DNA of 64,000 nucleotides, taken from IMG/VR virus record IMGVR_UViG_3300034072_000926, positions 401,260-465,259 of that record. One strand, 5' to 3'. A program made the position numbers and the translations under genes. Positions 10,426 through 49,240 of the stretch are shown here, one piece after another. Position 1 is the first letter of the stretch. The number at the start of each line of letters is the position of its first letter. Below the pieces are notes generated by a model, which made no database searches, had not been told where the DNA came from, and saw nothing but the letters and a program-made list of their open reading frames with translations.

Positions 10426-10794
10426 TTATTGCTTCAAATCAACAGGAGTTATTTCCTTTGGAGCATCCGGACGAGTCTCGCCGATGCTCTTCAGCTTTTC
10501 GTCCTGTTCTTTCTGTAGTTCTGCCTCTCGTTGCGCAGCATTCATGTCCATCAGGTCATTGCATTCGCCCCTCGTGAACACGCCATCGGCTTTAGATTTC
10601 AGAATGAAGATCCTGAAATTGGGATGGGTTTCATAGAAGGACTCGAACAGACTGTAGCAGGAATCTGAGGCACGTTCGTTGTCACGATGGTGGTTCATGT
10701 AATAGGGAAAGCCTACCCCAAAACCCACTATCACTGCACAACATGAAGCGAACAGTAAAGCTGATGATCGATTAGACAATCTCTTCCTCCTCAA
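10426..10794 (-). CDS. membrane-anchored hypothetical protein
   Basis: N-terminal hydrophobic segment LLFASCCAVIVGFGVGFPYY. Confidence 0.6.
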   Translation of the reverse strand: MRRKRLSNRSSALLFASCCAVIVGFGVGFPYYMNHHRDNERASDSCYSLFESFYETHPNFRIFILKSKADGVFTRGECNDLMDMNAAQREAELQKEQDEKLKSIGETRPDAPKEITPVDLKQ

Positions 10795-12409
10795 TCAACA
10801 CGCCTGCTCGAATCCTCAAAATGTTGATGCAGTTCTCAAGACCATACGCCTCAATGAATGCACCGAACCGAGGACCATCACTGGATCCCAACAGGCACTC
10901 GTATAGCGCCTGGAACCAAGAACGCAAAGGTTCAAATCCATGTGCCTTGCCAACCTCATATACCTGATACTGGTAATGATCAGCCGTCATGTTGGGCAGC
11001 ATTGCCTCAAGGCGAGTAGCAAGGTCGATGAACGCATCAGCTTCCTGAACCGTTGGTTCCCGACATTCACGATCATACAGACCACGCTCAGTCGCGTAGC
11101 GGATGACCTTGTTGGCCTTGATGAGAACCTGCAACCGCTGCTGGAAGTCAAGTGGTCGAGACTGTTCGAGGTAGCTGACCAGCGTTTCAGCGTCCGAAGC
11201 CTGGCTGACCACGCTCAAGTTGAGCAATAGGCTATACGCCACATCGACGATCGGTTCGGCGATCCCATTCTCAGTGAAGAACCACGCAGCATCGTTCGGA
11301 GTGAGCGGTCGCCCAAGCATCTTCAGATAGTCGTCTTCCATCTTGGGAACAAGATCGATATGAATCGGCTTAGATGCAGTCGGCTTCTGGAACAGGAAGA
11401 GCATGAGCGATTCCTTAGAGCCATAGGACAACCAGTCCTCAATCGAAAAGCCATTGCCCTTCGACTTGCTGATCTTCTTGCCCTCTGCGTCGAGGAAGAG
11501 TTCATAGGTCATGCCAACTGGAGGTGTCCCGCCGATTGCACGACAGATCTTCCGAGAAGCCGTAACCGAATCAATGAGATCCTTGCCGGACATTTCGTAG
11601 TCCACATCAAAGTGAGCCCAGCGCATTGCCCAGTCCACCTTCCACTGAAGCTTGGAGCGACCATTACCCGTTGGGCTCGTCACCGCCGTGACATCATCCC
11701 TTCCGGTTTCCCACGTGAGCTGGCGCCCGGGGATCACCATTTCGCGCGAGACACCCTCATTGAGGAGTCGTCCCTCAAAAAGCGGCATGAATGGACTGTA
11801 GGTTGCGCGGCGCTCCTCACCCAGTGTGGGCAGCATCACGCCCTGAATGGCATCGTAATTGTCCCAGATGCGATCCAGCATTTCGTTGAACTTGCCCGAC
11901 CGGTAATAGTCAGAGGAGCTCACGAAGGATACGCGACTCCGATCCGGCGAGCTGCCGACCACCGAGCCATCGTAGGTCTTGAGAATGTCGTCAACAAACC
12001 GCACCAGACGATCGTTGTTAGCGCCCGCAAAGCTGCCTGCATACTGGTCGGCATCGTTGGCCACGCACTCGTCCATTTCCGGATAAGGATTTGGAACCGT
12101 GCTCAGCGGCTTGCCCAGATAATCCTGCATCCACGCGGGCATCCCATCAGGAACCTTCCGCATCGCGTCGTAGTCGTCGCTGAACATGATAAGTCGAGTC
12201 TGATACGCCTTGTCAGTCAGCGTATCAAATGCCTTCATAACCCAAAGGGTGCGAACAACTTCTGCGAACGTGCCGATATGCGGCGCACCCGAGGGACCAT
12301 AGCCGGTCTCGAACGTCACGACATCACCAGGCTTCTTCCCCTTCTTCTCAATATGCTTGAGAAGTGAACGGGCCTCTTGGAAGGGCCAGCTCTTTGCCTG
12401 AGTAGTCAC
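10772..12409 (-). CDS. lysS: lysine--tRNA ligase, class I
   Basis: ETGYGPSGAPHIGT (HIGH), KLQWKVDWAMRW, YEMSGKD, KISKSKGN (KMSKS), GPRFG; GTG start after AGGAGG. Confidence 0.95.
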   Translation of the reverse strand: MTTQAKSWPFQEARSLLKHIEKKGKKPGDVVTFETGYGPSGAPHIGTFAEVVRTLWVMKAFDTLTDKAYQTRLIMFSDDYDAMRKVPDGMPAWMQDYLGKPLSTVPNPYPEMDECVANDADQYAGSFAGANNDRLVRFVDDILKTYDGSVVGSSPDRSRVSFVSSSDYYRSGKFNEMLDRIWDNYDAIQGVMLPTLGEERRATYSPFMPLFEGRLLNEGVSREMVIPGRQLTWETGRDDVTAVTSPTGNGRSKLQWKVDWAMRWAHFDVDYEMSGKDLIDSVTASRKICRAIGGTPPVGMTYELFLDAEGKKISKSKGNGFSIEDWLSYGSKESLMLFLFQKPTASKPIHIDLVPKMEDDYLKMLGRPLTPNDAAWFFTENGIAEPIVDVAYSLLLNLSVVSQASDAETLVSYLEQSRPLDFQQRLQVLIKANKVIRYATERGLYDRECREPTVQEADAFIDLATRLEAMLPNMTADHYQYQVYEVGKAHGFEPLRSWFQALYECLLGSSDGPRFGAFIEAYGLENCINILRIRAGVLIEEEEIV

Positions 12410-12481
12410 GTATGCCTCCTTGAATACTATCAAGCTGCAACGTATAGACAATCACACAGGTGTCAACCTATTTAGGAGGAC

Positions 12482-14882: not shown

Positions 14883-14913
14883 AGGGGACTCTTCCGGTAT
14901 TGAAGAGTCCCCT
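14883..14913. terminator. GC-rich hairpin between convergent genes
   Basis: AGGGGACTCTTC/GAAGAGTCCCCT 12-bp inverted repeat. Confidence 0.7.
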
Positions 14914-14960: not shown

Positions 14961-15296
14961 TTAGCTGTTCTTTTTCGTCCACTTATCCAGATATTTCGTC
15001 AGTTCGGGACTGGCCTTACCCGTTCCGAAAACTCGATTTATTGCGAGTGCCTGTTGCAGATCCTGAGCGTTCATCGGCTGCGCGAACGGCTTGTTCTGTG
15101 ACAGCTTGCGGAAACAGGCGTTCAGTGCGCCCTGTTCGGTCGTGAAGTCGATGCCGTTGAGCCAGCTCTTGTCCGGCTTCTCGCACAGGAATTCGTAGGT
15201 GTCGTCATCGTGATGGATGAGGCAGATCTTCATCTGGGTCAGGAAATCTGCGAAACGAGGATGGGTCAGGCTTTCAAGCTTCGTGAAGGACTTCAT
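14961..15296 (-). CDS. hypothetical protein
   Basis: 111-aa ORF, AAGGAG SD, host-like GC3-rich codons. Confidence 0.7.
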   Translation of the reverse strand: MKSFTKLESLTHPRFADFLTQMKICLIHHDDDTYEFLCEKPDKSWLNGIDFTTEQGALNACFRKLSQNKPFAQPMNAQDLQQALAINRVFGTGKASPELTKYLDKWTKKNS

Positions 15297-15305
15297 GGTA
15301 TCTCC

Positions 15306-15815
15306 TTAAAAGGTATTGCGGTCCTTGTCGAAGGTAACTTCGCGGACATTCATTTGGACGAGAGTGTGGGCGCTCTGCGGCAATTCCTGCGTGTCGAAGG
15401 ACACGTTGATGTTATCACGGAAAAGGAATCCGGGGCCGTGGTGAAGGGTAACGAATACCGGCGTCGTAGCAAGGGCCTGACATTCCGTCATCGTTGCATA
15501 TTCGTTCGGGCATTCGTAGAGGATGGCATCGACCGTCATCTTCTCCATGAAGTCCTGGCTATTGTTCCGGACTTGAACGTCCATCGTGAACGCCGGATTG
15601 AACTGGCCGTTGTCACGTTGGATGTTGTCGATGGTGATGCTGTAGGAGGGGTCCAGACCAGTGACCGTATAGTCACTCTGCCAATCCTTGACCCACTGCA
15701 CGGCGAGCCAGAGCCCCAAAGCGATCATGAACAAGCGGAAGAGTTTGAACTGAAACATCAGAGCGAAAATGGCACCGAAAATTACAAATCCGCTAATGCC
15801 TCCACTCTTCTGCAT
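15306..15815 (-). CDS. membrane-anchored hypothetical protein
   Basis: N-terminal hydrophobic stretch; AGGAGATCGAAC-ATG leader. Confidence 0.7.
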   Translation of the reverse strand: MQKSGGISGFVIFGAIFALMFQFKLFRLFMIALGLWLAVQWVKDWQSDYTVTGLDPSYSITIDNIQRDNGQFNPAFTMDVQVRNNSQDFMEKMTVDAILYECPNEYATMTECQALATTPVFVTLHHGPGFLFRDNINVSFDTQELPQSAHTLVQMNVREVTFDKDRNTF

Positions 15816-15879
15816 GTTCGATCTCCTTGTTGCCTAATCACACGGATAGCAGAAATAGGAGACAAGTCAACCAGAATTT

Positions 15880-16848
15880 TCAGATATATCGAAGACTGGA
15901 TATAACGCTGAGATTCGTGAGCTGCCCGCCAAATACCGAATAGGGAATTGCGAGGATACCCTTGTCTAAGAGTTCCTCCCAGCTATAGGGAACAACCTGC
16001 AAGTAGGAAACTTGCTGGTCACTGATGTAGAAATTGATCTGAAAATCTCGATGCAATTCCCGTTGCATATTCAACCGAGACGTGAGTATCTGGGAACCGT
16101 ATGTCATGCAAGCAAAGCGTTCCTTCCGAAGAAGAAACTCAGCTTTGCGGAAATTCTCCTTATCATCTTCCCAAGTCAATGCCCGGAAGGTAGGAGTGTA
16201 GAGGGAAATGTCCTCACTGGGAACCATGCAGACTCCCATCATCTTCTCAGAAATGAAGCTCTTAGAGAGGCTATGGAGGAAGATAGCCTGGCCGGTATCC
16301 CAGAGACTTTGGGTCAGCTCGTCCATGTCGAAATAGTTGTAGACGCCGTCGATGACGATGCGACGCTTCTTGTCATGTGCAAGCCATTGAAAGAGAGTTG
16401 CACGTTCGCCCATTGAGAGTGGTTCATTGCGCGGCTTGCTAGGATGACAGAAGAGCAGGAAGTCACCCTGGGGTATATTGGCCAGTGGGTAACTCCGATA
16501 TGTCACTGTGAGCTGGAATGGATTCCGCTTTGCAAGTTGCATATAGACCGGATAGACATCTTCCGGAATAACCCATAGCTTGGCGAAATTTGATTTCAGG
16601 AGAACTTCGAGAGAATGACGAACACCCTGAGAGATCAAGGTATTAGGCTTGAGGTCACGGGATAGTTTCATTGCATCGAGCCAGAACTCAGCAAGGTGAC
16701 AGCGGTATGAAACCTCAGGTAGATCATCGGGATGGAAGTTGCGCGGCTTGAGCCTGCTATTGCGTAGGCGAGACTCGGACAGATCGAGAATGTCCGGCTG
16801 TTCGGCGAGGATCTTCTCTTTTGCTTCGATGAAATTCTGAAGGTTCAC
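15880..16848 (-). CDS. PLP-dependent aminotransferase class I/II-fold protein
   Basis: ISQGVRHSL, VYPVY, CHPSKP, VIDGVY, HSLSKS (PLP lysine) motifs. Confidence 0.78.
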   Translation of the reverse strand: MNLQNFIEAKEKILAEQPDILDLSESRLRNSRLKPRNFHPDDLPEVSYRCHLAEFWLDAMKLSRDLKPNTLISQGVRHSLEVLLKSNFAKLWVIPEDVYPVYMQLAKRNPFQLTVTYRSYPLANIPQGDFLLFCHPSKPRNEPLSMGERATLFQWLAHDKKRRIVIDGVYNYFDMDELTQSLWDTGQAIFLHSLSKSFISEKMMGVCMVPSEDISLYTPTFRALTWEDDKENFRKAEFLLRKERFACMTYGSQILTSRLNMQRELHRDFQINFYISDQQVSYLQVVPYSWEELLDKGILAIPYSVFGGQLTNLSVISSLRYI

Positions 16849-18116
16849 TTGATCGTAATCTCGCTCTTAGGGTCCTCGAGACTGGCGAGGACAGTTCCAT
16901 CTTGCATGATATTCCAGCTTCGTGCAATGCCATTTTTCCTCTCCCAGAACATGCTGGGTTCGGTGTAGGCCGCAACACGCATTTTCTTGCCCTTGATTTC
17001 ACCTTCAAAGAAGGGCGCACCCCAGGGAAGCTGACCTTTCTCCTCAAACGCAATGTTCTCCATTGCCTCAAGGACTACAGAGAGCGACACTTGATTCGCC
17101 TCGCTGTAGAGGTTTTCCTCATTGCCTGCGTAGACACTTTCGAAGGTGGTCGAAACGTAGAGCTCTTTGAAGCAGACTTCCTGAACACCAAGCTCTGCAG
17201 CCCATTCCAAATACTTCTCAACCTCAGCGGCCGAGTTGATTCCGCTCTTTTGTAGGACGCAGATGAGACGCGACGTGATCTTCGTCTTTTTGACTTGTTC
17301 GATCACTTCTTCGGTATTCGTGTCAAGACCCATGATGAATTGGTTGACCACCGGCTCATAGTGGTGACGCGAAATTGCTAGGACATTCAAGCCATTGGCA
17401 TCATAGTCTATGACCATATCGGGACGCTTTGCAAGCATTACACCATTTGTAATCAGGACGGTCTTGAACATTGAACTGCCGACTAAGATTGCCTTGCAGA
17501 TTTCAGGATGACTGGCTAGGGTAGGTTCCCCGCCACCTGTTATGACGAACCGAGTTGCACCGCGATGATAGGCAGTTATCATCTTGCGGACGATGGAAGG
17601 ACTGAACATTGCTTTCGAGTCCTGTTCAACCGAGACCGAAGCCTCACTGAAACAGAACTTGCATTTGGCCTGACATGCTTGACCGACTGGGAGCCAGCTA
17701 ATCGAGCGAGGTTCGAGAGACTCGTAGGGTTTGAAGCCACCCTGGATAGCCATCGACATAGCGTAGATTGTCTCCACGTTATATGTCTCGCCATTCATGT
17801 AGATTGTCTCAACAGGGAAGCGATTGCCCTCGATGTAGCGACCCAGCCCCGTGCCCGTTACATCATTGGTACGAACATCGTAGCCTTTAAGATCTCCCTG
17901 CATGATAATGATCTCATCACCAGGAATGTTGAGCTTCTCGAGGAGCCGTTCGGCCTTGGCAGTTCCGATGCCGAGTTCGTGATGTCGGAGGACAAATGTC
18001 GTTCCAGGATAGGAAGACTCGGGGATGGCAGACTTATCATAGGCGCGAGCATACTTGTCGTAGGCTTTCGCAAAGTTGCTCAGCAGCGTCACATGATAAT
18101 AAAAGAACATCAGCAT
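16845..18116 (-). CDS. radical SAM protein with extra N-terminal domain
   Basis: CQAKCKFC (CxxxCxxC), ITGGGEPT, LITNG, AISRHHY. Confidence 0.88.
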   Translation of the reverse strand: MLMFFYYHVTLLSNFAKAYDKYARAYDKSAIPESSYPGTTFVLRHHELGIGTAKAERLLEKLNIPGDEIIIMQGDLKGYDVRTNDVTGTGLGRYIEGNRFPVETIYMNGETYNVETIYAMSMAIQGGFKPYESLEPRSISWLPVGQACQAKCKFCFSEASVSVEQDSKAMFSPSIVRKMITAYHRGATRFVITGGGEPTLASHPEICKAILVGSSMFKTVLITNGVMLAKRPDMVIDYDANGLNVLAISRHHYEPVVNQFIMGLDTNTEEVIEQVKKTKITSRLICVLQKSGINSAAEVEKYLEWAAELGVQEVCFKELYVSTTFESVYAGNEENLYSEANQVSLSVVLEAMENIAFEEKGQLPWGAPFFEGEIKGKKMRVAAYTEPSMFWERKNGIARSWNIMQDGTVLASLEDPKSEITIK

Positions 18117-18169
18117 CCCTTAGGTTTCGCACCTGTTTAGCTGATGTAGGTGTTCCAGTCAAGCGCAAA

Positions 18170-18206
18170 GAAACCCGCCGGAGAGTGGGGGAACCCGGCG
18201 GGTTTC
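18170..18206 (-). terminator. intrinsic terminator-like hairpin
   Basis: AAACCCGCCGG/CCGGCGGGTTT followed by CTTT on the minus strand. Confidence 0.65.
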
Positions 18207-18241
18207 TATCCTCTAGGGTTGCTGACTACAGACTCGCAGGC

Positions 18242-18409: not shown

Positions 18410-18525
18410 TTCGATCTCCTGCTAACCTGTTGTGCTTTTGCACCACAACAAATTGCGCTTGTGAGCACTTCCAGTCAAATGGAAGACAAAACAGGAGAGC
18501 TTAAGGAAACAACGCTCTATCCAGG

Positions 18526-19533: not shown

Positions 19534-19881
19534 TTAACGGCAGCGACGGTCGATTGCGCGTCCTGCCAGAGCACCAGCACCGGCGCCTACGATAGTGCCA
19601 GTTGCACGATCGCCTTCGGTATCGATGGAGCGACCCAGCAGTCCGCCTGCTACTGCGCCGAGAATTGTGCCGGTGGTTCCACCACGGCAACGCTCGCCAC
19701 GATAGCCATTGCGGTATGGACCACGGCGATCATAACGGTCATAACCACGATAAGGACGATAGTCCCTGTAGTGACGGTCATAGCGATAGCCACGATCATG
19801 ACGACCATGATCCCTTGCCTCAGCGGCAACAGGAGCCAGAACCATCAGAGAGGCCATAAGACCAAGAATGAGCTTTTTCAT
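19534..19881 (-). CDS. secreted glycine-zipper 2TM protein with Arg/Tyr/Asp-rich repeat
   Basis: signal peptide, RxY repeats, GTILGAVAGGLLGR..GTIVGAGAGALAGR. Confidence 0.85.
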   Translation of the reverse strand: MKKLILGLMASLMVLAPVAAEARDHGRHDRGYRYDRHYRDYRPYRGYDRYDRRGPYRNGYRGERCRGGTTGTILGAVAGGLLGRSIDTEGDRATGTIVGAGAGALAGRAIDRRCR

Positions 19882-25043: not shown

Positions 25044-27143
25044 TTAGTTGCCGAAGCCGATGCCAGACTTACGATAACCCGGCTTGACCTTCAGTTCGTC
25101 CTCAATAAGGTTGAGGATTTCGTTAGGGTCTTCCACGCCCAGGATCGTGACCTTCTTCATGACCGTCGAGAAGTCACCCGGTGCCAGGTTATCGAAACGC
25201 TCAATGCGCGTCGGAGCAGGCAGCTTGAAATACTTCTCAAAGAGCTTCGCGCTTTGTTCAGGACGCATGAAGTCAAACTTCATCTTGAAGGTGAACCTAC
25301 GCAGCGAGGCAGGGTCCAGGTTGTCCATCAAGTTGGTCGTGATAATGAAGGGCTGGTCGTGATTTTCCATCTGCGACAGCATTTCATTGACCTGGCTGAT
25401 CTCCCAGCTCTGACGTGCCTTGGTGCGATCCTGAAGGAAGGAGTCGCCTTCGTCGATGATCAGGACCTTCTTGCCCTCACGCGCTTCCTTGAAAGCCTTC
25501 GCGATGTTCTTCTCGCACTCGCCGAGCCACATGCTCTGCAGGTCCGATGCGCGCTTGTAGAGCACTTGCTTGCCTAGGCGCTTTGCAAGGTAGCGACCAT
25601 ATTCGCTCTTACCCGTGCCAGGAGCACCGTAGAGGCAAAGCGAGAATGCCGGGTTAGCGGTCATCAGACGCTCAGTGAACTTATTGAGGTCCAAGTCAGT
25701 GTTTGCGCAAGACACATCGTAGGGAGTGTCCTTCATCTTCACTTCATCGAACTTGCGAGTCTCACCGAAGTTCATCAGTCGGTCGAGGCTAACGATAACT
25801 TCAGAGATGTCATCGCCCTCAAGGCCGGCCATGCCGCTGATCTTCATGGAGTTGTTGATCAGAGCAGGAACAATGTCAAAGGAGTTGCCGAAGCTTTCCA
25901 CGAGTTCGTCGGACAGGTTGACGTTATACTTTGCTGCCGCACGAGCCCACATTCCCTTGCGAGCTTCCTGAGGAGGAATTTCGAAGTGAATGTTATAGAC
26001 CATTCGACGCAAGCAAGCCGAACCCATCGCGGTCACGCTGTTGGTGGTCCAGATGATGGGGATGGTAGTCGTCTCAATAATGCGGTTGATGAACGCCTTG
26101 GAGAACGACGCATTGTTGTCGACCTTGAACAAGTCTTCCATTTCATCGAAAAGGATGACCGCCTTCGGATCTTTCTTGAACAGCTTCAGTGCCAGCTTGA
26201 GCGAGGTCAAACGCTGAGCACGACCCTTTTCAGCATCGTCGTTTTCCGAGATGTCGCCGACGATGTGGAGGTTCCAGTCGTTCTGCTTCGCCAGTGCAAG
26301 AGCCAGTTCGGTCTTACCCGTGCCCGGCAGGCCCCAGAACATCACGTTCGTGCCCTTGTTCTTGGTTTCCAAGCTCGTGTTCACGATCCGAACAGTGCGG
26401 TCGATTTCCTTTGCGAGGTGCGGATAATTCTCCATTCCGAGCGTGGATTCCACGTTGCTGGGAAAGAGCTTCTCTTCGAGAGATTCGATGGAGAAGCTAG
26501 TGGCGCAGAGCGCTTCCTTGAGTTCCGCATTCACGTAGGGAAGGCGATTACCTTCGCTCTCAATAAGGACACCCGACTTGAAGAGGAAGCCCTTGACAAT
26601 CTTCTCCATATCCTGCGAAGGGATACCGAGGAGAATGTTGTAGCGTTGGACCGGATCCTTCATGTCCATGTGGTGCCCAAACTTGTCGAACACATAATTG
26701 TATCCGTAGGGCAGGCTCTGACGCAGTCGAATTGCAAGGTCGAGAATGACCGCTTCGTGCTCGTTCAAATCCAGCAAGTCAGCTAGTGCAACCGAGTTCT
26801 CGAGCAGTTCGAAGGGTTCCAGGACCTCAGGGAAGAGTTCGGCCATACGAGCAGCAGCAGCCTGCATGTCGTCGATGGTCATATACTTCTTGAAGCTTGC
26901 GTAGCTCGCGAATTCTGCCTTCTCGGGCGAGAGCGTTGCCATCCACTCGTTCCGACGAGTAGTGATGATCGTCCACCACTGATTCTCGTTCTCAGAACCA
27001 TCCTCGAGGTTGCCGACATACATGAGATGCCGATCCATCGCCTGCTCGATAGCCGAGTCCTGATGGGTGTGGGCAGTCCACGCTCGAACGAGGTTGTAGA
27101 TCATCTTGTTGTAAAAGCGATTATGCATCTGAGGTCCCAACAT
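25044..27143 (-). CDS. AAA+ ATPase with two AAA domains (SpoVK/Ycf46/Vps4-like)
   Basis: GLPGTGKT/ILFDEME and GAPGTGKS/LIIDEGD, TTN, LRRF. Confidence 0.92.
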   Translation of the reverse strand: MLGPQMHNRFYNKMIYNLVRAWTAHTHQDSAIEQAMDRHLMYVGNLEDGSENENQWWTIITTRRNEWMATLSPEKAEFASYASFKKYMTIDDMQAAAARMAELFPEVLEPFELLENSVALADLLDLNEHEAVILDLAIRLRQSLPYGYNYVFDKFGHHMDMKDPVQRYNILLGIPSQDMEKIVKGFLFKSGVLIESEGNRLPYVNAELKEALCATSFSIESLEEKLFPSNVESTLGMENYPHLAKEIDRTVRIVNTSLETKNKGTNVMFWGLPGTGKTELALALAKQNDWNLHIVGDISENDDAEKGRAQRLTSLKLALKLFKKDPKAVILFDEMEDLFKVDNNASFSKAFINRIIETTTIPIIWTTNSVTAMGSACLRRMVYNIHFEIPPQEARKGMWARAAAKYNVNLSDELVESFGNSFDIVPALINNSMKISGMAGLEGDDISEVIVSLDRLMNFGETRKFDEVKMKDTPYDVSCANTDLDLNKFTERLMTANPAFSLCLYGAPGTGKSEYGRYLAKRLGKQVLYKRASDLQSMWLGECEKNIAKAFKEAREGKKVLIIDEGDSFLQDRTKARQSWEISQVNEMLSQMENHDQPFIITTNLMDNLDPASLRRFTFKMKFDFMRPEQSAKLFEKYFKLPAPTRIERFDNLAPGDFSTVMKKVTILGVEDPNEILNLIEDELKVKPGYRKSGIGFGN

Positions 27144-32671: not shown

Positions 32672-34213
32672 TTATACGGCGTAACGAACCTCCGCTTCCC
32701 AGTTGCCAATACGCACACCGCCCTTCTTCACCTTGCTCATCTCATACGTTGCGAGAATGTCCTCGATAACCCCGTAGCGGGTGTTCAGAGCTCCGTCGAT
32801 GAAGATCTCCTTATCGAGTTGCTTATTGACCAACTGCTGGAAGAGGACGTTCCCAGCAAGTCCATTCTTGATCTTCGGTTCCATCTCCTGGAACTTCTTG
32901 TGGTCAATACCCAGGTAGTCCCGAACCATAATGTTGATCGTGGAAACGACCTGCAAGGTGTGTTCGCGGCTGCAAAGACCACAGATCTTTGTGGTCTTGA
33001 TGTTGAATACGTGACCACAATCCTCGTCTTCACAACGCTTCCAAACATTGGTGCGCTTCTCGTAGCTCTTAGCCGACAGTTCGCGTTCCTCACGTTCGAG
33101 GAGCAGACCCTTTGCAGCACGGGGCCATTCAATTGCTTCGACCGGACCATGCTCCTTGATGTTGCCGGCAAAATCGAAAACATAGCCGAAACGCTCGCCT
33201 TCACACTTGCGGAGGACACGACCTACCATCTGCTGGTAAAACGCAATGCTGCCGACCTTGCGGGTCAGGAAGCAGAACTTGGCCAGCTTCTCGTCAAAGC
33301 CTTCACACAGAGCGTTAACGCTGATCAGCACCTGCGTGATGCCCTCATGGAAACGCTTGAAGATGTCTTCCCGAACCACCGGGCTCTGACCCTGAACATA
33401 ATCGACATCGCCAACATTGCCCTTGCCTGCCGTTACGACTTCGCACTTAATGCCCAGTGCAAGGAACTGCGCTTCCAGTTGCTTGGAGTGGTTCGTATCA
33501 TCGGTAAACACGATAGTGCGCTTGTTCTCATGCGAGGCAGTTGCGAGCAGCCATGTCTTGCCAACATGGTCATCAGCGAGGCTGAGCTCTTCATATACGG
33601 GCTTCTTCAAGTCGCCTCGTTCGATGAGTTCGCTCATCGTTGCTGCAACGATCATCCGATCCCCATACCATTCTGCAAGGCTTTCGCCGGGCTTATCAGT
33701 GCCATCCCGATACGGAGTAGCGGTGAAGCCGACGACCTTAGCGTTGGGCCAGCGGTTGCGGATTGCTTGGAACTCCGACGAGGTTGCCTTGTGGGCTTCA
33801 TCGAAGATGATCATTGTGGGTTCGAAGCTGGGATCGAAGTAGAGGTCGTTGGACAGACCGAGGGTGTTGGTCAACGTCTTCGGAAGCGTAACGAGCAAGT
33901 TACGCTTATAGTCGCATACCAGCTTGTGGGAAGCCTTGCCGACCAAGTAGGTCTTGATCGAATCATGCAGGGCGCTCGACATAATCTGGAAGCCATGCTG
34001 CATGGTTGCAATCGTCTGTCCCAGGAGAACCTGCAAGTTAACGATTGCAAGAACCCGACCGCCCCGCTTGATTTCCTCAGCCGCTACGTCTCCCATCACG
34101 ACCGTCTTGCCGTATCCCGTAGGAGCAACGACAAGAACAGAAGGCTGTTGCTGCAAAATGTTAAACACTTGCGTTGTTACGTTGCGCTGTTCTTCACGAG
34201 GCTTGATGACCAT
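32672..34213 (-). CDS. SF2 DEAH helicase (RadD/UvsW-like) with C-terminal Zn-finger
   Basis: APTGYGKT, DEAH, FTATP, LCEGFD, QQMVGRVLR, CEDEDC..CGLC. Confidence 0.92.
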   Translation of the reverse strand: MVIKPREEQRNVTTQVFNILQQQPSVLVVAPTGYGKTVVMGDVAAEEIKRGGRVLAIVNLQVLLGQTIATMQHGFQIMSSALHDSIKTYLVGKASHKLVCDYKRNLLVTLPKTLTNTLGLSNDLYFDPSFEPTMIIFDEAHKATSSEFQAIRNRWPNAKVVGFTATPYRDGTDKPGESLAEWYGDRMIVAATMSELIERGDLKKPVYEELSLADDHVGKTWLLATASHENKRTIVFTDDTNHSKQLEAQFLALGIKCEVVTAGKGNVGDVDYVQGQSPVVREDIFKRFHEGITQVLISVNALCEGFDEKLAKFCFLTRKVGSIAFYQQMVGRVLRKCEGERFGYVFDFAGNIKEHGPVEAIEWPRAAKGLLLEREERELSAKSYEKRTNVWKRCEDEDCGHVFNIKTTKICGLCSREHTLQVVSTINIMVRDYLGIDHKKFQEMEPKIKNGLAGNVLFQQLVNKQLDKEIFIDGALNTRYGVIEDILATYEMSKVKKGGVRIGNWEAEVRYAV

Positions 34214-35412: not shown

Positions 35413-37110
35413 TCAGCGATCGTTGTCGCCGGCCTGCTCTTCGTTGGAGAAGTTGCTCGTGCGAGCAATTACCGAATCGATGAGCACATTGTCAACGGGC
35501 TTGCTTTCGGCCCTGGCAAGCTTCACAGCCAGCTTGATCACGTTCTTGATCTGACGACCATTCAGATCATGCTCAGCCAGTTTAGCGAGATCCAGACCCT
35601 GGACACCGGCAGCGTCAGTCAGGTTCGTCCAAATCTTAGCGCGCTTCTCGACCGTGGCAGCACCAAAACGCAGGCCGATGGAAATACGCGAGTAGAACGC
35701 CTGGTCAATGTTCTTCACGCGGTTGGTCGTGAGGAAGAGAACACCCTGATGGTATTCCAAGAGACGCAGGAACACGCCGACCATTGCGTTGCGGACGATG
35801 TCCTTCTCGTCACGCTCTTCAAGGAAGATGTCAGCTTCGTCGAGCAGCAGAACCGCATTCCAGACCGTCGCGACATCAAGGATGCGACGCAGAGTCTTTT
35901 CCAGCGAGTCAGGGTTGGTTCCGAGTTCGCCAACGCTGATGCTATAGAGAGGACGCTGGAGCTCTTCCGCGATGGCTTCTGCGGTCAGAGTCTTGCCCTG
36001 TCCCGGCGGACCATGCAGCAGGAAGATCGACCCGCCGCCCTTGCCGTCGATGAGGTCAGAGAAGTCACCACTGTCATCCTGCACGATGGCTTTGACTAGT
36101 GCCTTGTCCTCTTCGGGCAGAACCAGCTTCTCGAACGCGTCAGTACGGAACTCAATGTCGCTGAGACCCGAAACTGCCATACGACCCCACTGCTTCACAG
36201 ACATGCTGAAGCCATAGAGGTATGGATAGGTGCGCCACAGATCGCTATCGGGAATCACGATGTCAATCTTCTTGTTGTTGCGCTCTTCGCGGTTCGATTC
36301 GATGCCGCTCTGGTAGCTCTCGTTGGAGAACTGGTTGTTGTCAACCTGCTGGAAGCTCGAGATGTCCATGATCACACGACCATCGGCGCGGAACGCCTGA
36401 CTCGACCAGTAACTGTTGCGAGTCAGCTGACCCTTATACTGAATATAGTGAACGCCATTCGCATACTTGCGGTAACGAGCGCCACGCTCGGTCAGGTAAG
36501 CCTTGGTCTCGTCATCGAGGGGACGAACAGTCAGCGAGTTGATCTTCTGGAAACCAGCGAAGTAGCCCACGTTGGTTTCAAAGATGTTGTCCTTTATCGT
36601 GCCGTGGACGTTCGAGATCACCTTAATCTGGACCTTGTAATAGGTCGAGAAGAAAGTCTGAACCAGCTTGACGCTCTCGATAGTGCCGGCGATCAATTCA
36701 CCGTCAGCGGAGGTAACGACTTCCTTGTCCTTCTCGAGCAGGAAGTTGAGGTCACCAAATTCAACATGGCCCTTCGCCAGCTTGTCAGCCAGCTGAGACT
36801 TGATTTCAGTCTCGTAGGCATCGATGATGTCGAGGACAGGCTTATACTTGCTCGAATTGCTCGTGAAATCGACTTCGTAGTCACCGAATTCGCGCACGAT
36901 ATCTGCACGGCGCCCCATCAGGACCGACAGAGGATAGATGTGAGAAAAACGCAGAGCTTCGTGGTAGCCGAGGACTCCCTGCATGATGCTCTGCATCATG
37001 TGCTTGATGTCTTCGCCGACCTTGGTGCAGTCCAGATAGGACTGGCCACCGTCATCAAAACGCGAGATGATCTGCTTCACCTGCGTCTTCTTTGCTTTGG
37101 CTGTGGTCAC
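35413..37110 (-). CDS. AAA+ ATPase (single C-terminal AAA domain)
   Basis: HGPPGQGKT, LLLDEADIF, LRLLEY, LTTNR, LNGRQIKN. Confidence 0.92.
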   Translation of the reverse strand: MTTAKAKKTQVKQIISRFDDGGQSYLDCTKVGEDIKHMMQSIMQGVLGYHEALRFSHIYPLSVLMGRRADIVREFGDYEVDFTSNSSKYKPVLDIIDAYETEIKSQLADKLAKGHVEFGDLNFLLEKDKEVVTSADGELIAGTIESVKLVQTFFSTYYKVQIKVISNVHGTIKDNIFETNVGYFAGFQKINSLTVRPLDDETKAYLTERGARYRKYANGVHYIQYKGQLTRNSYWSSQAFRADGRVIMDISSFQQVDNNQFSNESYQSGIESNREERNNKKIDIVIPDSDLWRTYPYLYGFSMSVKQWGRMAVSGLSDIEFRTDAFEKLVLPEEDKALVKAIVQDDSGDFSDLIDGKGGGSIFLLHGPPGQGKTLTAEAIAEELQRPLYSISVGELGTNPDSLEKTLRRILDVATVWNAVLLLDEADIFLEERDEKDIVRNAMVGVFLRLLEYHQGVLFLTTNRVKNIDQAFYSRISIGLRFGAATVEKRAKIWTNLTDAAGVQGLDLAKLAEHDLNGRQIKNVIKLAVKLARAESKPVDNVLIDSVIARTSNFSNEEQAGDNDR

Positions 37111-37689: not shown

Positions 37690-38286
37690 TCAGGCGATCA
37701 ATGCCCTGAAAGTGAGGCTGATCCTCGACCGACTATTGAAGCCGGCTTTCGGAATACGATGCTGATTACCGTCCTGGAATCCAGCTGGCATCAAGCAAAG
37801 CGAGCCCTGCTCCAGTGCGACTTCCTGAGGCTCACTCCAGGTCTTTTCGTTTGTTGCCTCGTTGAATGAAACCAACTGTCGGAACTGAATTGCGCGAGGC
37901 GTGTGGACACCTTCGCCGCCATAGAGAGTCACGATCGCAATGGGCTTCGAATGATCGATGCCTGGATCATCGTCGGCATGCCAACCGAGCCAATCCCTCG
38001 AGGTCTCGTAACCGTTCAGGAAACAGCCCTCGAATTCAACAGCCACATCCGTGTGAGCAGCCAAGGCGTCGCTGACTTCCTTGATCGACCGATGAAGTTC
38101 CTGTGCCTTGTAGGTGCGAATGCCTGCGCCACGACCATAGGTATAGTCGCGATCGAAGGTGTTCGTCCAATATTCGCGGCGAGGAGCATCTTCGCGTCGT
38201 TCCCAGTTGAGCTCATCCCAGAGTTCATAGAACATCTTCCCCGCCCGAGCAGATGGGATGAAATCAGGAATATAGACGACGGTCAT
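37690..38286 (-). CDS. AlkB-like 2OG-Fe(II) dioxygenase
   Basis: YTYG, FLNGY, GWHADD (HxD), HRIPK, RISLTFR; start MTVVYI after AAAGGAG. Confidence 0.88.
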   Translation of the reverse strand: MTVVYIPDFIPSARAGKMFYELWDELNWERREDAPRREYWTNTFDRDYTYGRGAGIRTYKAQELHRSIKEVSDALAAHTDVAVEFEGCFLNGYETSRDWLGWHADDDPGIDHSKPIAIVTLYGGEGVHTPRAIQFRQLVSFNEATNEKTWSEPQEVALEQGSLCLMPAGFQDGNQHRIPKAGFNSRSRISLTFRALIA

Positions 38287-38648
38287 GGTAACATCTGCTC
38301 CTTTATGGTGTGGAAGTTGCGGTCGTCTCCGACCTGTAAAAGCGAAACATTGAGGCCATTGTCGATGATCAACTGTCTGACCTCGAACATATCGTGGACG
38401 TAGCCATCGGTATAGACCGCGATCGGACCTTTGAAATCCTTGACAATGCGGAGTGCCGGGCAGAGCAATGAGCCACCGCCGCCGATGAATTGGAAATAGT
38501 TGATGTGATCCTGGCTCTTCATCGTGCCAATCACATGCGGGCGACAGTCGAAGCAAATGACCTTGTCGCCAACTTTGAGCTCGCTGCGAATTCGTGATAT
38601 CTCACTGACGGGCAGACTGCCACTTGTATCTATGAGAACTGCTCGCAC
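38283..38648 (-). CDS. small VWA-like domain protein
   Basis: IDTSGS (MIDAS), GGGS, YTDG. Confidence 0.75.
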   Translation of the reverse strand: MRAVLIDTSGSLPVSEISRIRSELKVGDKVICFDCRPHVIGTMKSQDHINYFQFIGGGGSLLCPALRIVKDFKGPIAVYTDGYVHDMFEVRQLIIDNGLNVSLLQVGDDRNFHTIKEQMLP

Positions 38649-47865: not shown

Positions 47866-49143
47866 TCAGTCCAACTCGCTCAGAAGGAATTTGTTCTCGA
47901 GATAGGGACGAAGCACCTCAGGGATACGTATCTCTCCGCCGTCCTGATAGTTCTCGAGCACCGCCACAAGTGTTCGACCAACAGCTAGACCACTACCGTT
48001 GAGGGTATGTGCGAAGACCGTGTGGCCATCAACCTTGTAGCGGGTATTCATGCGACGTGCTTGGAAATCGCCGCAGTTAGAGACGCTGCTGATCTCTCGA
48101 TACGCTTGCTGACCCGGAAGCCAGACCTCAATATCATAGGTCTTCTGTGCGCTGAAACCCATATCGCCCTTACAGAGCAACATCGTGCGATAAGGAAGAT
48201 CAAGACGAGCAAGGATCTGTTCAGCAGCATTCAGCATATAGTCATGCTCGCTGACACTTTGTTCGGGCTTGCAAATCGAAACCAATTCAACTTTCTGGAA
48301 CTGGTGTTGACGAATCAGCCCACGAGTATCACGACCTGCCGAGCCTGCCTCACTACGGAAGCAATCAGTCAATGCCACATAGCGATGCATCCCTAGCAGG
48401 ATTTCATCAGCATGGATATTGGTCAGGCTGACCTCGGCAGTGGGAATGAGATATTGTTCGGTTGCAAAGGCATCTTCGCTATTGGCAATTCCGAAGAGAT
48501 CATCTTTGAACTTGGGAAGCTGCCCAGTGCCGAATAGTGCTTCCTTGTTGACGATCACTGGAGGGATGACCTCGAGGAAGCCCCGCTCACGATGACTATC
48601 AAGCATGAACTGACCGAGGGCACGATGGAGACGAGCGACTGGACCCATCAACATGCTGAAGCGGGATCCGCTGATCTTCGCAGCACGGTCCATACCGAAT
48701 TGCAGGTCAAGTTCGTAATGAGGAACGGAGTTCTTGGGAAGGATGACGCCCCATTTGCGAACTTCTACATTGCTTGATTCGTTCGAGCCATCGGGAACAT
48801 CATCAGCCGCGATATTGGGACACTGTAGGAGATAGCCGTTGAGAACAAACTCACTGCTATTGGCCTGGTGCTCATATAGCTTGATATCGTCCTTCAGTTT
48901 CGCGATAATCGCTTTTAGCTCATCGACTTTCTCAAGGTCATTAGACTTCATAGCCAGACCAATATCCCCGCTGAGCTTTTTCAGAGCGGACTGCGCCTGC
49001 TGTTGCTTGGAAAGGAAGCCTCGACGATTCTCGTCATATTCGAGAATCTTATCCGTTTTTGGATCATGGCCTCGACTCTTCATAGCGTCAGTGAAGGCCT
49101 GTGGATTGTCCCTGATGGACTTGATATCGAAGTGATAATTCAT
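47866..49143 (-). CDS. serS: serine--tRNA ligase
   Basis: N-terminal coiled coil, LIPTAEV, FRSEAGSAGRDTRGLIRQHQFQKVE, EISSVSNC, TLNGSGLAVGRT. Confidence 0.96.
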   Translation of the reverse strand: MNYHFDIKSIRDNPQAFTDAMKSRGHDPKTDKILEYDENRRGFLSKQQQAQSALKKLSGDIGLAMKSNDLEKVDELKAIIAKLKDDIKLYEHQANSSEFVLNGYLLQCPNIAADDVPDGSNESSNVEVRKWGVILPKNSVPHYELDLQFGMDRAAKISGSRFSMLMGPVARLHRALGQFMLDSHRERGFLEVIPPVIVNKEALFGTGQLPKFKDDLFGIANSEDAFATEQYLIPTAEVSLTNIHADEILLGMHRYVALTDCFRSEAGSAGRDTRGLIRQHQFQKVELVSICKPEQSVSEHDYMLNAAEQILARLDLPYRTMLLCKGDMGFSAQKTYDIEVWLPGQQAYREISSVSNCGDFQARRMNTRYKVDGHTVFAHTLNGSGLAVGRTLVAVLENYQDGGEIRIPEVLRPYLENKFLLSELD

Positions 49144-49240
49144 ACCGCTTCGTAACATTGGTTACACTAGGCGTCAAGACTAGATTGGGTAGTCATGGTG
49201 AAACCCAGTTCGTTTCCGAACCGGGCCTCATGTATTTAGA

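What the first reader, a model, noticed from the sequence alone, without database searches (positions are those of the whole stretch)
16845..18116. Radical SAM + PLP enzyme two-gene cassette
Seen: 4-nt overlap (16845-16848) couples a 423-aa radical SAM protein, with a ~135-aa N-terminal domain (YYHVT), to a class I/II aminotransferase-fold protein. The pair is bounded by a terminator and promoter-like sites. Inference: a compact pathway making a small molecule or modifying a nucleotide or tRNA base, either a counter-defence product or a captured antiviral system. The substrate is unknown.
Basis: partly seen in the sequence, partly recalled or inferred. Interest (0 to 1): 0.6.

Follow-up and report, generated by a model that had tools for sequence, protein, structure and literature searches.

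The report
Coupled radical SAM–PLP enzyme pair
A 465-kb phage carries two always-paired enzyme genes of unknown chemistry (a radical SAM enzyme and an aminotransferase-fold partner) that in many bacteria sit inside operons that sense and process ADP-ribose, so the pair probably alters an NAD-derived nucleotide in the phage–host contest over NAD.

Summary
Window 16845-18116 (-) encodes a radical SAM protein with an unmatched ~135-residue N-terminal domain. It overlaps by 4 nt a 322-aa protein (15880-16848, -) with a class I aminotransferase fold.

The two genes are an obligate module. They were adjacent or fused in all 86 loci examined, and about 57 protein clusters are PLP–rSAM fusions, with two more in the reverse order. 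The family is uncharacterised and spread patchily by horizontal transfer: about 214 of 185,579 species genomes, and at least three separate viral acquisitions. It is not viperin, MoaA, a SPASM enzyme, a PADLOC defence protein or the phage thymidine-hypermodification pair.

The new result is context. In 21 of 86 loci, plus one hold-out locus, spanning several phyla, the pair lies within about 2.5 kb of an NrtR (ADP-ribose-sensing) regulator, ADP-ribosyl hydrolases (ARH, NADAR, PARG), Tpt1, a DUF4291 ART-like protein or NAD salvage genes. A methyltransferase often follows directly. Operator-like palindromes lie upstream of the rSAM gene.

My best reading is a two-step radical plus PLP modification of an NAD/ADP-ribose-type nucleotide. 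The chemistry is inferred, not shown. The phage role (counter-defence or exclusion of rival phages) is open.

The parts
16845..18116 (-). Radical SAM enzyme gene. It encodes 423 aa from the first ATG; the likelier start is Met3 at 18110, giving 421 aa.
   Evidence: ORF and translation. PF04055 at 46.1 bits against a 29.5 cut-off. More than 1000 full-length homologues. AF2 pLDDT 93. Nearest folds are GDGT-MAS, viperin and MoaA at Z 21-22.
17712..18116 (-). Family-specific N-terminal domain of the rSAM protein (residues 1 to about 135, mixed alpha/beta).
   Evidence: Conserved over the full length in 121 homologues, with S13, N14, Y22, K28, G51, G92 and E115 invariant. Confidently modelled. No Pfam or PHROG hit. 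Best Atlas TM 0.39, and nothing domain-specific in the VIA search.
17652..17675 (-). CX3CX2C [4Fe-4S]/SAM cluster motif (C148, C152, C155).
   Evidence: Invariant in alignment A1. Only two further near-invariant Cys residues (C286, C315), so no SPASM- or MoaA-type auxiliary cluster.
16845..16848 (-). 4-nt overlap (GTGA) between the rSAM stop and the GTG start of the partner gene, which implies translational coupling.
   Evidence: The same 4-nt overlap occurs in at least 26 of the 86 loci where start calls are unambiguous.
15880..16848 (-). Fold-type I (class I aminotransferase fold) partner of 322 aa, presumed PLP-dependent. The Schiff-base Lys196 codon is at 16261-16263.
   Evidence: Homologues carry PF00155. 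K196, D167, Y170 and S193 are invariant. HisC is the best PDB profile match at E 1e-8. AF2 pLDDT 93 with Foldseek TM 0.70. The canonical PLP-phosphate Arg (HisC R222) is replaced by a hydrophobic residue.
18162..18214 (-). GC-rich hairpin (20-nt arms) that ends the upstream 55-aa gene. This is the terminator upstream of the cassette.
18153..18162 (-). TTGACTGGAA box, a -35-like element just upstream of the rSAM gene. An identical copy lies at 18469-18478.
   Evidence: Two exact copies against 0.21 expected by chance. Read. The generic sigma-70 scan did not call a full promoter here.
15306..15815 (-). 169-aa protein with a hydrophobic N-terminus, 64 nt downstream of the PLP gene. Probably co-transcribed and specific to this phage lineage.
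   Evidence: No Pfam or PHROG hit. No homologue in the bacterial loci. A 171-aa gene occupies the same position in the 8.5-kb relative.
14961..15296 (-). 111-aa protein, the last gene before a hairpin at about 14884-14912. Specific to this phage lineage.
   Evidence: A 112-aa gene occupies the same position in the 8.5-kb relative.

Best explanation
The two genes encode an obligate two-enzyme module of an uncharacterised family.

Shown:
- The first enzyme is a radical SAM protein with a viperin/MoaA-like core and a private N-terminal domain.
- The second is a HisC/CobD-like protein with a fold-type I PLP fold.
- The two are always adjacent or fused.
- The module moves horizontally among bacteria and has entered large viruses several times.
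- In many bacteria it is embedded in NrtR-controlled operons with ADP-ribosyl hydrolases, Tpt1, an ART-like protein and NAD salvage genes, usually followed by a SAM methyltransferase.

Inferred mechanism:
1. The rSAM enzyme abstracts a hydrogen from the ribose of an NAD+/ADP-ribose-type nucleotide and, by radical dehydration or oxidation, creates a carbonyl.
2. The PLP partner transaminates, or otherwise processes, that position to give an amino-modified nucleotide.
3. Where present, the downstream methyltransferase N-methylates it. This is the logic of DesII, DesV and DesVI in desosamine synthesis.

In bacteria, expression would be switched on when free ADP-ribose accumulates. The phage also encodes NadE, PncB, an NMNAT-like enzyme, a Nudix protein, NADAR and ARH. 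I infer that it uses the pair to reshape the NAD/ADP-ribose pool during infection, probably as a counter-measure to NAD-based host immunity.
For: Coupling:
- The genes are adjacent or fused in 86/86 loci, and also in L088, L089, L095 and the 8.5-kb relative.
- About 57 fusion clusters are in the PLP-rSAM order. P0190 and P0208 are in the reverse order.
- Full-length domains within the fusions were verified.

Context:
- Recurrent neighbours, identified by Pfam, are NrtR, ARH, DUF4291, Tpt1/KptA, NADAR, microbial PARG, NAPRTase and a methyltransferase. Two neighbours are NadE and one carries a Macro domain.
- These genes are concentrated within 0-2.5 kb of the pair, mostly on the same strand, in 21 loci from Verrucomicrobiota, Planctomycetota, Acidobacteriota and Pseudomonadota.
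- The context is scattered over the rSAM tree, requiring at least 9 changes, so it is not an artefact of one clade.
- A hold-out Ralstonia megaplasmid shows Tpt1, NrtR, rSAM, PLP and MT.
- In two Acidobacteriota loci the cluster is just rSAM, PLP and NrtR on one strand, behind a perfect 8+8 palindrome (TAGTGTAC-N3-GTACACTA). L014 and L026 have related palindromes.
- NrtR is reported to sense ADP-ribose (PMC9503650, section 3.8).

Enzymology:
- The nearest solved folds include viperin (Z 20.8, rmsd 2.8), MoaA (Z 20.7) and BlsE (Z 19.2), with DesII and AbmM lower down. All of these act on nucleotides or nucleotide sugars.
- The partner is closest to HisC and CobD, whose substrates are phosphorylated amines.
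- Many basic residues are invariant in the rSAM protein: R137, R189, R283, K317, R399.

Phage: its own genome encodes NadE, PncB, Nudix, an NMNAT-like enzyme, NADAR and ARH.
Against: - No substrate or product was observed. The chemistry is analogy only.
- The NAD/ADP-ribose context is present in only about a quarter of loci. It is absent from all 36 actinobacterial loci, from the three fused genes inspected, and from the window itself, where the neighbours are ORFans and a tail-fibre gene.
- The structural neighbours also include peptide-modifying SPASM enzymes (SuiB, SkfB) and the lipid enzyme GDGT-MAS at equal Z, so a nucleotide substrate is not implied by fold alone.
- The partner lacks the canonical PLP-phosphate Arg, and no conserved carboxylate-binding Arg was found. 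PLP dependence is therefore itself inferred.
- ADP-ribose-processing operons are themselves mobile conflict islands, so some of the co-location could be island hitch-hiking.
Confidence: 0.42

Rival explanations
1. The pair is a self-contained antiviral (defence) system. It makes a toxic or chain-terminating nucleotide analogue in the manner of viperin. The phage captured it to exclude competing phages.
For: The rSAM core is closest to viperin by NCBIfam and PADLOC partial hits and by fold. The family is rare, patchy and horizontally transferred. Some loci lie beside CRISPR I-E, McrBC plus a reverse transcriptase, AbiE, PDC-M05 or AriA-like genes. The ARH/NrtR operons it joins have been predicted to be conflict systems (PMC9503650).
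Against: The pair matches no PADLOC model beyond the generic SAM-binding core (38 bits, residues 145-281). The viperin equivalog scores 41 bits against a 180 cut-off. Defence genes appear in only a handful of the 150 neighbours scanned. No paper in the library describes such a system.
Confidence: 0.22
2. The pair provides NAD precursor supply: a two-enzyme de novo route to a pyridine precursor (nicotinate-like) that feeds PncB and NadE when NAD is depleted.
For: The pair sits directly beside pncB, nadE, a weak nicotinamidase-like gene (faint Isochorismatase hit) and nrtR in L002/L003, and beside pncB, nadE and nrtR in L013. This fits the logic of an NrtR regulon. The phage encodes PncB, NadE and an NMNAT-like enzyme, but no nicotinamidase was noticed. 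The module works stand-alone, so its substrates must be common metabolites.
Against: There is no homology to any pyridine-forming enzyme. The frequent downstream methyltransferase, and the ARH, NADAR, PARG and Tpt1 partners, do not fit a simple precursor pathway. Streptomyces and other carriers are generally NAD prototrophs (general knowledge, not tested here).
Confidence: 0.1
3. The pair is the core of a secondary-metabolite pathway, for example an NAD-derived or amino-sugar natural product, carried by the phage as an auxiliary gene.
For: It is abundant in Streptomyces, Kitasatospora and myxobacteria. There is a precedent for a PLP enzyme (SbzP) that builds an alkaloid from NAD and SAM (PMC13518217). 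A tailoring methyltransferase is often present.
Against: No surrounding biosynthetic cluster was seen; the neighbours are heterogeneous. No SbzP-named chain appears among the solved structures matched by the partner's profile. The fused genes are monocistronic.
Confidence: 0.12
4. The pair performs phage DNA hypermodification (like the phage thymidine-hypermodification pathways that use radical SAM and PLP-dependent enzymes) or a tRNA base modification.
For: A radical SAM plus PLP-dependent enzyme combination is known in thymidine hypermodification (PMC8989533). The window is rich in tRNA and aminoacyl-tRNA synthetase genes.
Against: The partner has no tblastn match in 50,697 phage records, and the rSAM has only two weak matches. 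The partner has no PHROG hit. Most carriers are bacterial chromosomes, with no kinase or glycosylase-type partners nearby. TYW1, QueE and similar models score below their cut-offs.
Confidence: 0.05

Closest known systems
Viperin / prokaryotic viperins (pVip)
   Same: Radical SAM core of the same structural neighbourhood (Z 20.8, rmsd 2.8 over 234 residues, 18% identity). Best NCBIfam and PADLOC partial hits. Horizontally mobile and found at the virus–host interface.
   Different: Scores 41 bits against the 180-bit family cut-off. Has an extra 135-residue N-terminal domain. Has an obligate aminotransferase-fold partner instead of a nucleotide kinase. No evidence of ddhNTP formation.
MoaA (GTP 3',8-cyclase)
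   Same: Similar core fold (Z 20.7; Foldseek E 4e-12). MoaA acts on a nucleoside triphosphate.
   Different: TIGR02666 scores 39.5 bits against a 284 cut-off. There is no C-terminal second [4Fe-4S] cysteine triad; only C286 and C315 are conserved.
DesII / DesV / DesVI of desosamine biosynthesis
   Same: The same three-part logic on a nucleotide-linked sugar: a radical SAM enzyme creates a keto sugar, a PLP aminotransferase aminates it, and a SAM methyltransferase N-methylates it. DesII is among the fold matches (Z 15).
   Different: Only distant fold similarity. DesV is a DegT-type aminotransferase, not HisC-like. The substrate here is unknown. The methyltransferase is present in only about a quarter of loci and is absent from the phage.
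Phage thymidine-hypermodification pathways that use radical SAM and PLP-dependent enzymes (PMC8989533)
   Same: A phage-borne combination of radical SAM and PLP-dependent enzymes.
   Different: No detectable sequence similarity to any deposited phage genome for the partner. Most carriers are bacterial chromosomes. No hydroxymethyl-dU pathway partners were seen.
Lysine 2,3-aminomutase
   Same: Couples radical SAM chemistry with PLP. Appears as a fold match (2a5h, Z 15.0).
   Different: In the aminomutase, PLP is bound within the rSAM protein itself. Here a separate (or fused) complete aminotransferase-fold domain is used.
HisC / CobD subgroup of class I aminotransferases
   Same: Best sequence-profile and NCBIfam matches of the partner. 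The Lys, Asp, Tyr and Ser of the PLP site are conserved.
   Different: 12-17% identity. Lacks the PLP-phosphate Arg. Has private invariant motifs (HRCHLAE-WL and GVRHSL). Scores far below the family cut-offs.
ARG-centred, NrtR/WYL-regulated ADP-ribose-processing systems (Iyer et al. 2022, PMC9503650, section 3.8)
   Same: The same neighbourhood vocabulary: NrtR, ADP-ribosylglycohydrolase, NADAR, Macro/PARG, in variable mobile operons.
   Different: That description contains no radical SAM or aminotransferase component. The pair also occurs without any of these genes.

Membership tests
Radical SAM superfamily (PF04055) | CX3CX2C cluster motif, a glycine-rich SAM-binding motif, and a Pfam score above the gathering threshold | tested here: met
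   C148, C152 and C155 and GGGEP (194-198) are invariant in 121 sequences. PF04055 scores 46.1 bits against a 29.5 cut-off. Partial TIM-barrel fold.
Viperin / pVip | Score above the NF038283 equivalog cut-off (180 bits), or a full-length PADLOC pVip match | tested here: not met
   41.2 bits over residues 145-261 only. PADLOC pVip scores 38 bits over residues 145-281 only.
MoaA | TIGR02666 score of at least 284 bits, and a C-terminal auxiliary [4Fe-4S] cysteine triad | tested here: not met
   39.5 bits. Only two further conserved Cys residues, C286 and C315.
SPASM/twitch radical SAM enzymes | Cysteine-rich C-terminal auxiliary-cluster domain | tested here: not met
   No such Cys pattern among the conserved columns. 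All SPASM-family NCBIfam models score far below their cut-offs.
Class I/II aminotransferase fold (PF00155, fold-type I PLP enzymes) | The fold, plus the Schiff-base Lys in an S-x-S-K context, the Asp that binds the pyridine N, and Tyr | tested here: met
   Foldseek probability 1.0, TM 0.70. PF00155 on most homologues. K196, S193, D167 and Y170 invariant. The window protein itself gives no Pfam hit at E 0.1 or below.
Class I/II aminotransferase fold (PF00155, fold-type I PLP enzymes) | Arg that binds the PLP phosphate (AAT R266 / HisC R222), and Arg that binds the substrate alpha-carboxylate | tested here: not met
   HisC R222 aligns with a hydrophobic residue. There is no invariant Arg in the C-terminal domain. 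R77, in the GVRHSL motif, is the only invariant Arg.
Known anti-phage defence systems (PADLOC-DB v2) | A match of either protein to a system model | tested here: not met
   The partner has no hit, and the rSAM matches only the generic pVip core.
Phage thymidine hypermodification enzymes | Homology to the radical SAM and PLP-dependent enzymes of hypermodifying phages | tested here: not met
   tblastn against 50,697 phage records gives no match for the partner and only two weak matches (26% identity) for the rSAM. The partner has no PHROG hit.
NrtR regulon / ADP-ribose-processing operons | Physical linkage to nrtR with an operator-like palindrome upstream, and linkage to NAD/ADP-ribose enzymes | tested here: inconclusive
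   Met in 21 of 86 loci plus the hold-out L095, with palindromes in L024, L038, L014 and L026. Not met in the window, in actinobacterial loci, or for fused genes. NrtR binding cannot be tested here.

The most novel reading that the evidence does not exclude
The rSAM–PLP pair is a previously unrecognised enzyme module that chemically rewrites ADP-ribose or NAD+, for example to an amino- or deoxy-ribose analogue. In bacteria it is induced by the ADP-ribose sensor NrtR. Giant phages have captured it at least three times, to blunt NAD-depleting or ADP-ribose-signalling immunity or to poison rival phages. That would add a new radical-chemistry branch to the NAD/ADP-ribose arms race.
Probability: 0.3. 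Interest if true: 0.85.

Novelty: new variant of a known kind. Interest (0 to 1): 0.62.

Why it matters
NAD+ depletion and ADP-ribose-derived signals are central to bacterial immunity, and phages are known to answer with NAD salvage and ADP-ribose hydrolases. A radical SAM/PLP module wired into the same ADP-ribose-sensing operons, and repeatedly taken up by very large viruses, would have three consequences:

1. It would define a new enzymatic reaction on a central cofactor or its breakdown product.
2. It would give a function to a family of more than 1000 uncharacterised proteins, currently mislabelled as MoaA, PFL-activase or TYW1.
3. It would add a testable component to the predicted ARH/NrtR conflict systems.

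The natural fusions offer convenient single-polypeptide targets for biochemistry and structure determination.

Tried and rejected
- **Complex prediction** of rSAM with the partner gave no answer (score 0.00). It is not evidence for or against binding.
- **Phage collection searches.** Megablast of the cassette and tblastn of both proteins found essentially nothing.
- **PADLOC and PHROGs** gave nothing specific.
- **N-terminal domain.** The Atlas search by features and by structure (best TM 0.39), the VIA wide search and Foldseek gave no domain-level match. With both structure-prediction jobs used, the domain could not be folded and searched alone.
- **Literature.** Nine searches found no paper that links this pair with NrtR, ADP-ribose or defence. 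SbzP is only a chemical precedent, not a relative.
- **Actinobacterial neighbour 'families'.** Representatives of seven of my BLAST clusters from actinobacterial loci (and two of the three from Nannocystis loci) have no Pfam hit. They are probably spurious long ORFs in high-GC DNA, so the actinobacterial context remains unresolved. A look-up of a Kitasatospora copy returned only contigs of about 3.6 kb or less.
- **L002/L003.** I first took these for phage contigs, but no phage hallmark was found in the 17 kb examined. Their origin is undetermined, and they are not counted among the viral acquisitions.
- **TAG recoding.** A tRNA with a CUA anticodon suggested it, but TAG ends 57 of 309 long open frames, so it was rejected.
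- **Plasmid records** had no usable annotation.
Full report
**1. What is in the window**

One is 16845..18116 (423 aa, ATG start) and the other is 15880..16848 (322 aa, GTG start). The stop codon of the first and the start codon of the second share four bases.

The first protein is a radical SAM enzyme. Pfam PF04055 scores 46.1 bits against a cut-off of 29.5 over residues 143-277. C148, C152 and C155 and the GGGEP motif are invariant in an alignment of 121 homologues. Residues 1-135 are conserved throughout the family and modelled with high confidence. They match no Pfam or PHROG family and no known fold.

The second protein gives no Pfam hit by itself, but three results place it in the class I aminotransferase fold. 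Most of its homologues carry PF00155. A profile of the family finds histidinol-phosphate aminotransferase in the PDB at E 1e-8. Its AlphaFold model (pLDDT 93) superposes on class I aminotransferases with Foldseek probability 1.0 and TM about 0.70. The Schiff-base lysine (K196 in S-L-S-K), D167, Y170 and S193 are invariant. The arginine that normally holds the PLP phosphate is replaced by a hydrophobic residue, and no conserved carboxylate-binding arginine was found. PLP dependence is therefore likely but inferred, and the substrate is probably not an ordinary alpha-amino acid.

Three small corrections apply:
- Met3 is the likelier start.
- A strong hairpin (18162-18214) and a TTGACTGGAA box precede the cassette.
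- No terminator follows the second gene. Two small lineage-specific genes of 169 aa and 111 aa come first, and a hairpin near 14884-14912 closes the unit. Genes of matching size occupy the same positions in the closest relative. These genes have no homologues in the bacterial loci.

**2. The host genome**

The window is positions 401260-465259 of a 465,259-bp virus record rated complete by CheckV. GC content is 49%. The window also holds a tail-fibre-like gene, class I LysRS, SerRS and ten tRNA genes.

**3. The two genes are one module**

The rSAM protein has more than 1000 full-length homologues at 45-50% identity, nearly all bacterial or metagenomic. The partner's homologues fall on the same contigs.

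In 86 loci (80 from a scan of one genome per species, 6 from assemblies), a profile of the partner hits the ORF immediately downstream of the rSAM gene, or the same ORF, in every case. At least 26 of these loci show the same 4-nt overlap. The pairing also held in all later loci.

Full-length fusions exist:
- Schlesneria, Gemmata, an Alcaligenaceae MAG and a low-GC IMG/VR contig carry PLP–rSAM fusions.
- A search with one fusion found about 57 clusters of 700-840 aa in that order.
- Two proteins are fused in the opposite order.

Independent fusions in both orders are strong evidence that the two activities act on one pathway, probably as a complex. The one complex prediction I ran returned no verdict, so it is not evidence either way.

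**4. Distribution**

The species-level scan found 214 relatives among 185,579 genomes. They come from Streptomycetaceae, Nannocystaceae and other Myxococcota, Verrucomicrobiota, Planctomycetota, Acidobacteriota, several classes of Pseudomonadota and one Bacteroidota.

A FastTree phylogeny is not congruent with taxonomy. For example, an Alcaligenaceae sequence nests among Planctomycetota, and a Bdellovibrionales sequence pairs with Phycisphaerales.

The window protein groups with an 8.5-kb contig (61% identity) and a 120-kb contig that shares local synteny, with 95-100% support. Two IMG/VR contigs, L088 and L089, branch elsewhere. There were therefore at least three viral acquisitions. This tree is quick and has long branches, so its details should not be over-read.

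**5. What it is not**

- Viperin, MoaA, TYW1, QueE, SPASM and similar NCBIfam models all score an order of magnitude below their cut-offs.
- Only two cysteines are conserved beyond the SAM cluster, so no auxiliary cluster is expected.
- PADLOC recognises only the generic SAM-binding core.
- The partner has no match in 50,697 phage genomes, and the rSAM has only two weak matches. This excludes kinship with the thymidine-hypermodification enzymes (PMC8989533).

**6. The context signal**

I clustered the neighbours of the 86 loci and identified the recurrent clusters with Pfam:

| Neighbour | Loci | Note |
|---|---|---|
| Class I SAM methyltransferase | 23-25 | directly downstream |
| NrtR (Nudix plus winged-helix regulator) | 16-19 | |
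| ADP-ribosylglycohydrolase | 8-10 | |
| DUF4291 | 6-7 | proposed ART-like family, bioRxiv 10.1101/2024.07.30.605764 |
| Tpt1/KptA | 5-7 | |
| NADAR | 4-5 | |
| Microbial PARG | 3 | |
| NAPRTase | 3-4 | |

Two further neighbours are NadE and one carries a Macro domain.

Several observations argue that this is a real association:
- These genes lie overwhelmingly within 0-2.5 kb of the pair and mostly on its strand. None of them, except the methyltransferase, occurs in the actinobacterial loci.
- 21 of the 86 loci carry at least one such gene. They are spread over the rSAM tree, requiring at least nine changes.
- A Ralstonia megaplasmid found later, and not used to build the profiles, shows Tpt1, NrtR, rSAM, PLP and MT.
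- In two Acidobacteriota loci the cluster consists only of rSAM, PLP and NrtR on one strand. It is preceded by a promoter-like TTGACT box overlapped by a perfect palindrome, TAGTGTAC-N3-GTACACTA. Two gammaproteobacterial loci with divergent nrtR carry related palindromes, ACTTAGTGGG...CCCACTTAGT.

NrtR-type regulators sense ADP-ribose, as summarised in PMC9503650. The remaining neighbours are heterogeneous, with a sprinkling of defence and mobility genes: Cas I-E, McrBC, a reverse transcriptase, AbiE, HEPN and integrases.

The fused versions I inspected are solitary genes in unrelated surroundings. The module can therefore work alone on common metabolites.

**7. The phage's own NAD genes**

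Outside the window, the same phage encodes a cluster of glutamine-dependent NadE, PncB, a Nudix protein and an NMNAT-like nucleotidyltransferase at genome positions 145.7-151.1 kb. It also encodes a NADAR protein and an ADP-ribosylglycohydrolase. None of these is adjacent to the pair, which lies at 417.1-419.4 kb.

**8. Mechanism**

The following is shown: the coupling, the two folds, the conserved catalytic residues, the mobility of the module, and the association with ADP-ribose-sensing and ADP-ribose-processing genes.

The following is inferred. The closest solved rSAM structures include viperin, MoaA and BlsE, with DesII and AbmM lower down, and all of these act on nucleotides or nucleotide-linked sugars. 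Peptide-modifying and lipid-modifying enzymes score equally well, however. The partner resembles HisC and CobD, which handle phosphorylated amines. A methyltransferase commonly follows.

The most economical scheme has three steps:
1. The rSAM enzyme performs a radical dehydration or oxidation of a ribose in an NAD+/ADP-ribose-type molecule, giving a carbonyl.
2. The PLP partner transaminates that position.
3. The methyltransferase, where present, N-methylates the product.

This is analogous to DesII, DesV and DesVI.

The bacterial operons would switch this on when ADP-ribose accumulates. The phage could use it to drain or disguise ADP-ribose or NAD-derived molecules, or to make an analogue that interferes with NAD-consuming immunity. 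I give the NAD/ADP-ribose-linked reading about 0.4, and the specific chemistry less.

The rivals are a viperin-like stand-alone defence or exclusion system (0.22), a natural-product core (0.12), a pyridine-precursor route (0.1), and DNA or tRNA modification (0.05).

**9. Novelty**

Nine full-text searches found no description of this pair or of its link to NrtR. The most relevant survey of ADP-ribose systems lists the same neighbourhood components but no radical SAM enzyme. The enzymes belong to known superfamilies, so I rate the finding a new variant of a known kind. It has a concrete, testable hypothesis and natural fusion proteins as handles.

**10. Limits**

- The actinobacterial context is unresolved because my ORF calls are unreliable in high-GC DNA.
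- The origin of contigs L002/L003, where the pair abuts pncB, nadE, a weak nicotinamidase-like gene and nrtR, is undetermined.
- The N-terminal domain could not be folded and searched on its own.

Noticed in passing
window 40312-40388 (-): A tRNA with a CUA anticodon (amber suppressor type; ARAGORN calls it tRNA-Pyl), among ten tRNA genes in the window. TAG still ends 57 of 309 long open frames in the genome, so there is no sign of genome-wide TAG recoding.
   Followed up: partly
window 10772-12451 (-) and 47866-49158 (-): The phage encodes a class I lysyl-tRNA synthetase (PF01921, E 6e-88) and a seryl-tRNA synthetase (PF00587 plus Seryl_tRNA_N).
   Followed up: no
window 18153-18162 and 18469-18478 (-): An exact 10-nt box, TTGACTGGAA, occurs twice (0.21 expected), each time just upstream of a minus-strand gene and after a hairpin. 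It may be a phage-specific promoter element. A related TTGACT lies in the 64-nt gap after the PLP gene, at about 15863-15868.
   Followed up: partly
own genome G000:C1 145.7-151.1 kb (L093), 69.6-70.2 kb (L094), 18.8-19.8 kb (L087): A Preiss–Handler-type NAD cluster (NadE with a CN-hydrolase domain, PncB, Nudix, an NMNAT-like protein), plus NADAR, ADP-ribosylglycohydrolase and a TelA-like protein, elsewhere in the same phage genome.
   Followed up: partly
L024:2402-2420, L038:9908-9924, L014:9926-9952, L026:9922-9946: Operator-like palindromes overlap TTGACT/TTGACA promoter boxes upstream of the rSAM gene in bacterial loci that carry nrtR. They share the half-site TTAGTG.
   Followed up: partly
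L088:8861-11278 (IMG/VR GVMAG contig, GC 27%): A PLP–rSAM fusion on a contig binned as a giant-virus MAG, with an ADP-ribosylglycohydrolase about 6.5 kb away.
   Followed up: partly
L096:907-1086 and the equivalent position in L097 and L098: In Kitasatospora-type copies, a called 59-aa gene overlaps the rSAM start by 8 nt. Assemblies of this locus repeatedly break at about 3.6 kb or less.
   Followed up: no
window 25044-27143, 35413-37110, 32672-34213, 37690-38556 (-), 46508-47821 (+): Two AAA+ ATPases, a ResIII/DEAD helicase, a 2OG-Fe(II) oxygenase (AlkB-like family PF13532) and a weak group 1 glycosyltransferase match (just below the Pfam cut-off) in the same window.
   Followed up: no
window 19534-19881 (-) and L001:5488-5808: A glycine-zipper (Rick_17kDa_Anti) small protein is conserved a few genes upstream of the cassette, both in the window and in the related 120-kb contig. 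This marks local synteny.
   Followed up: no
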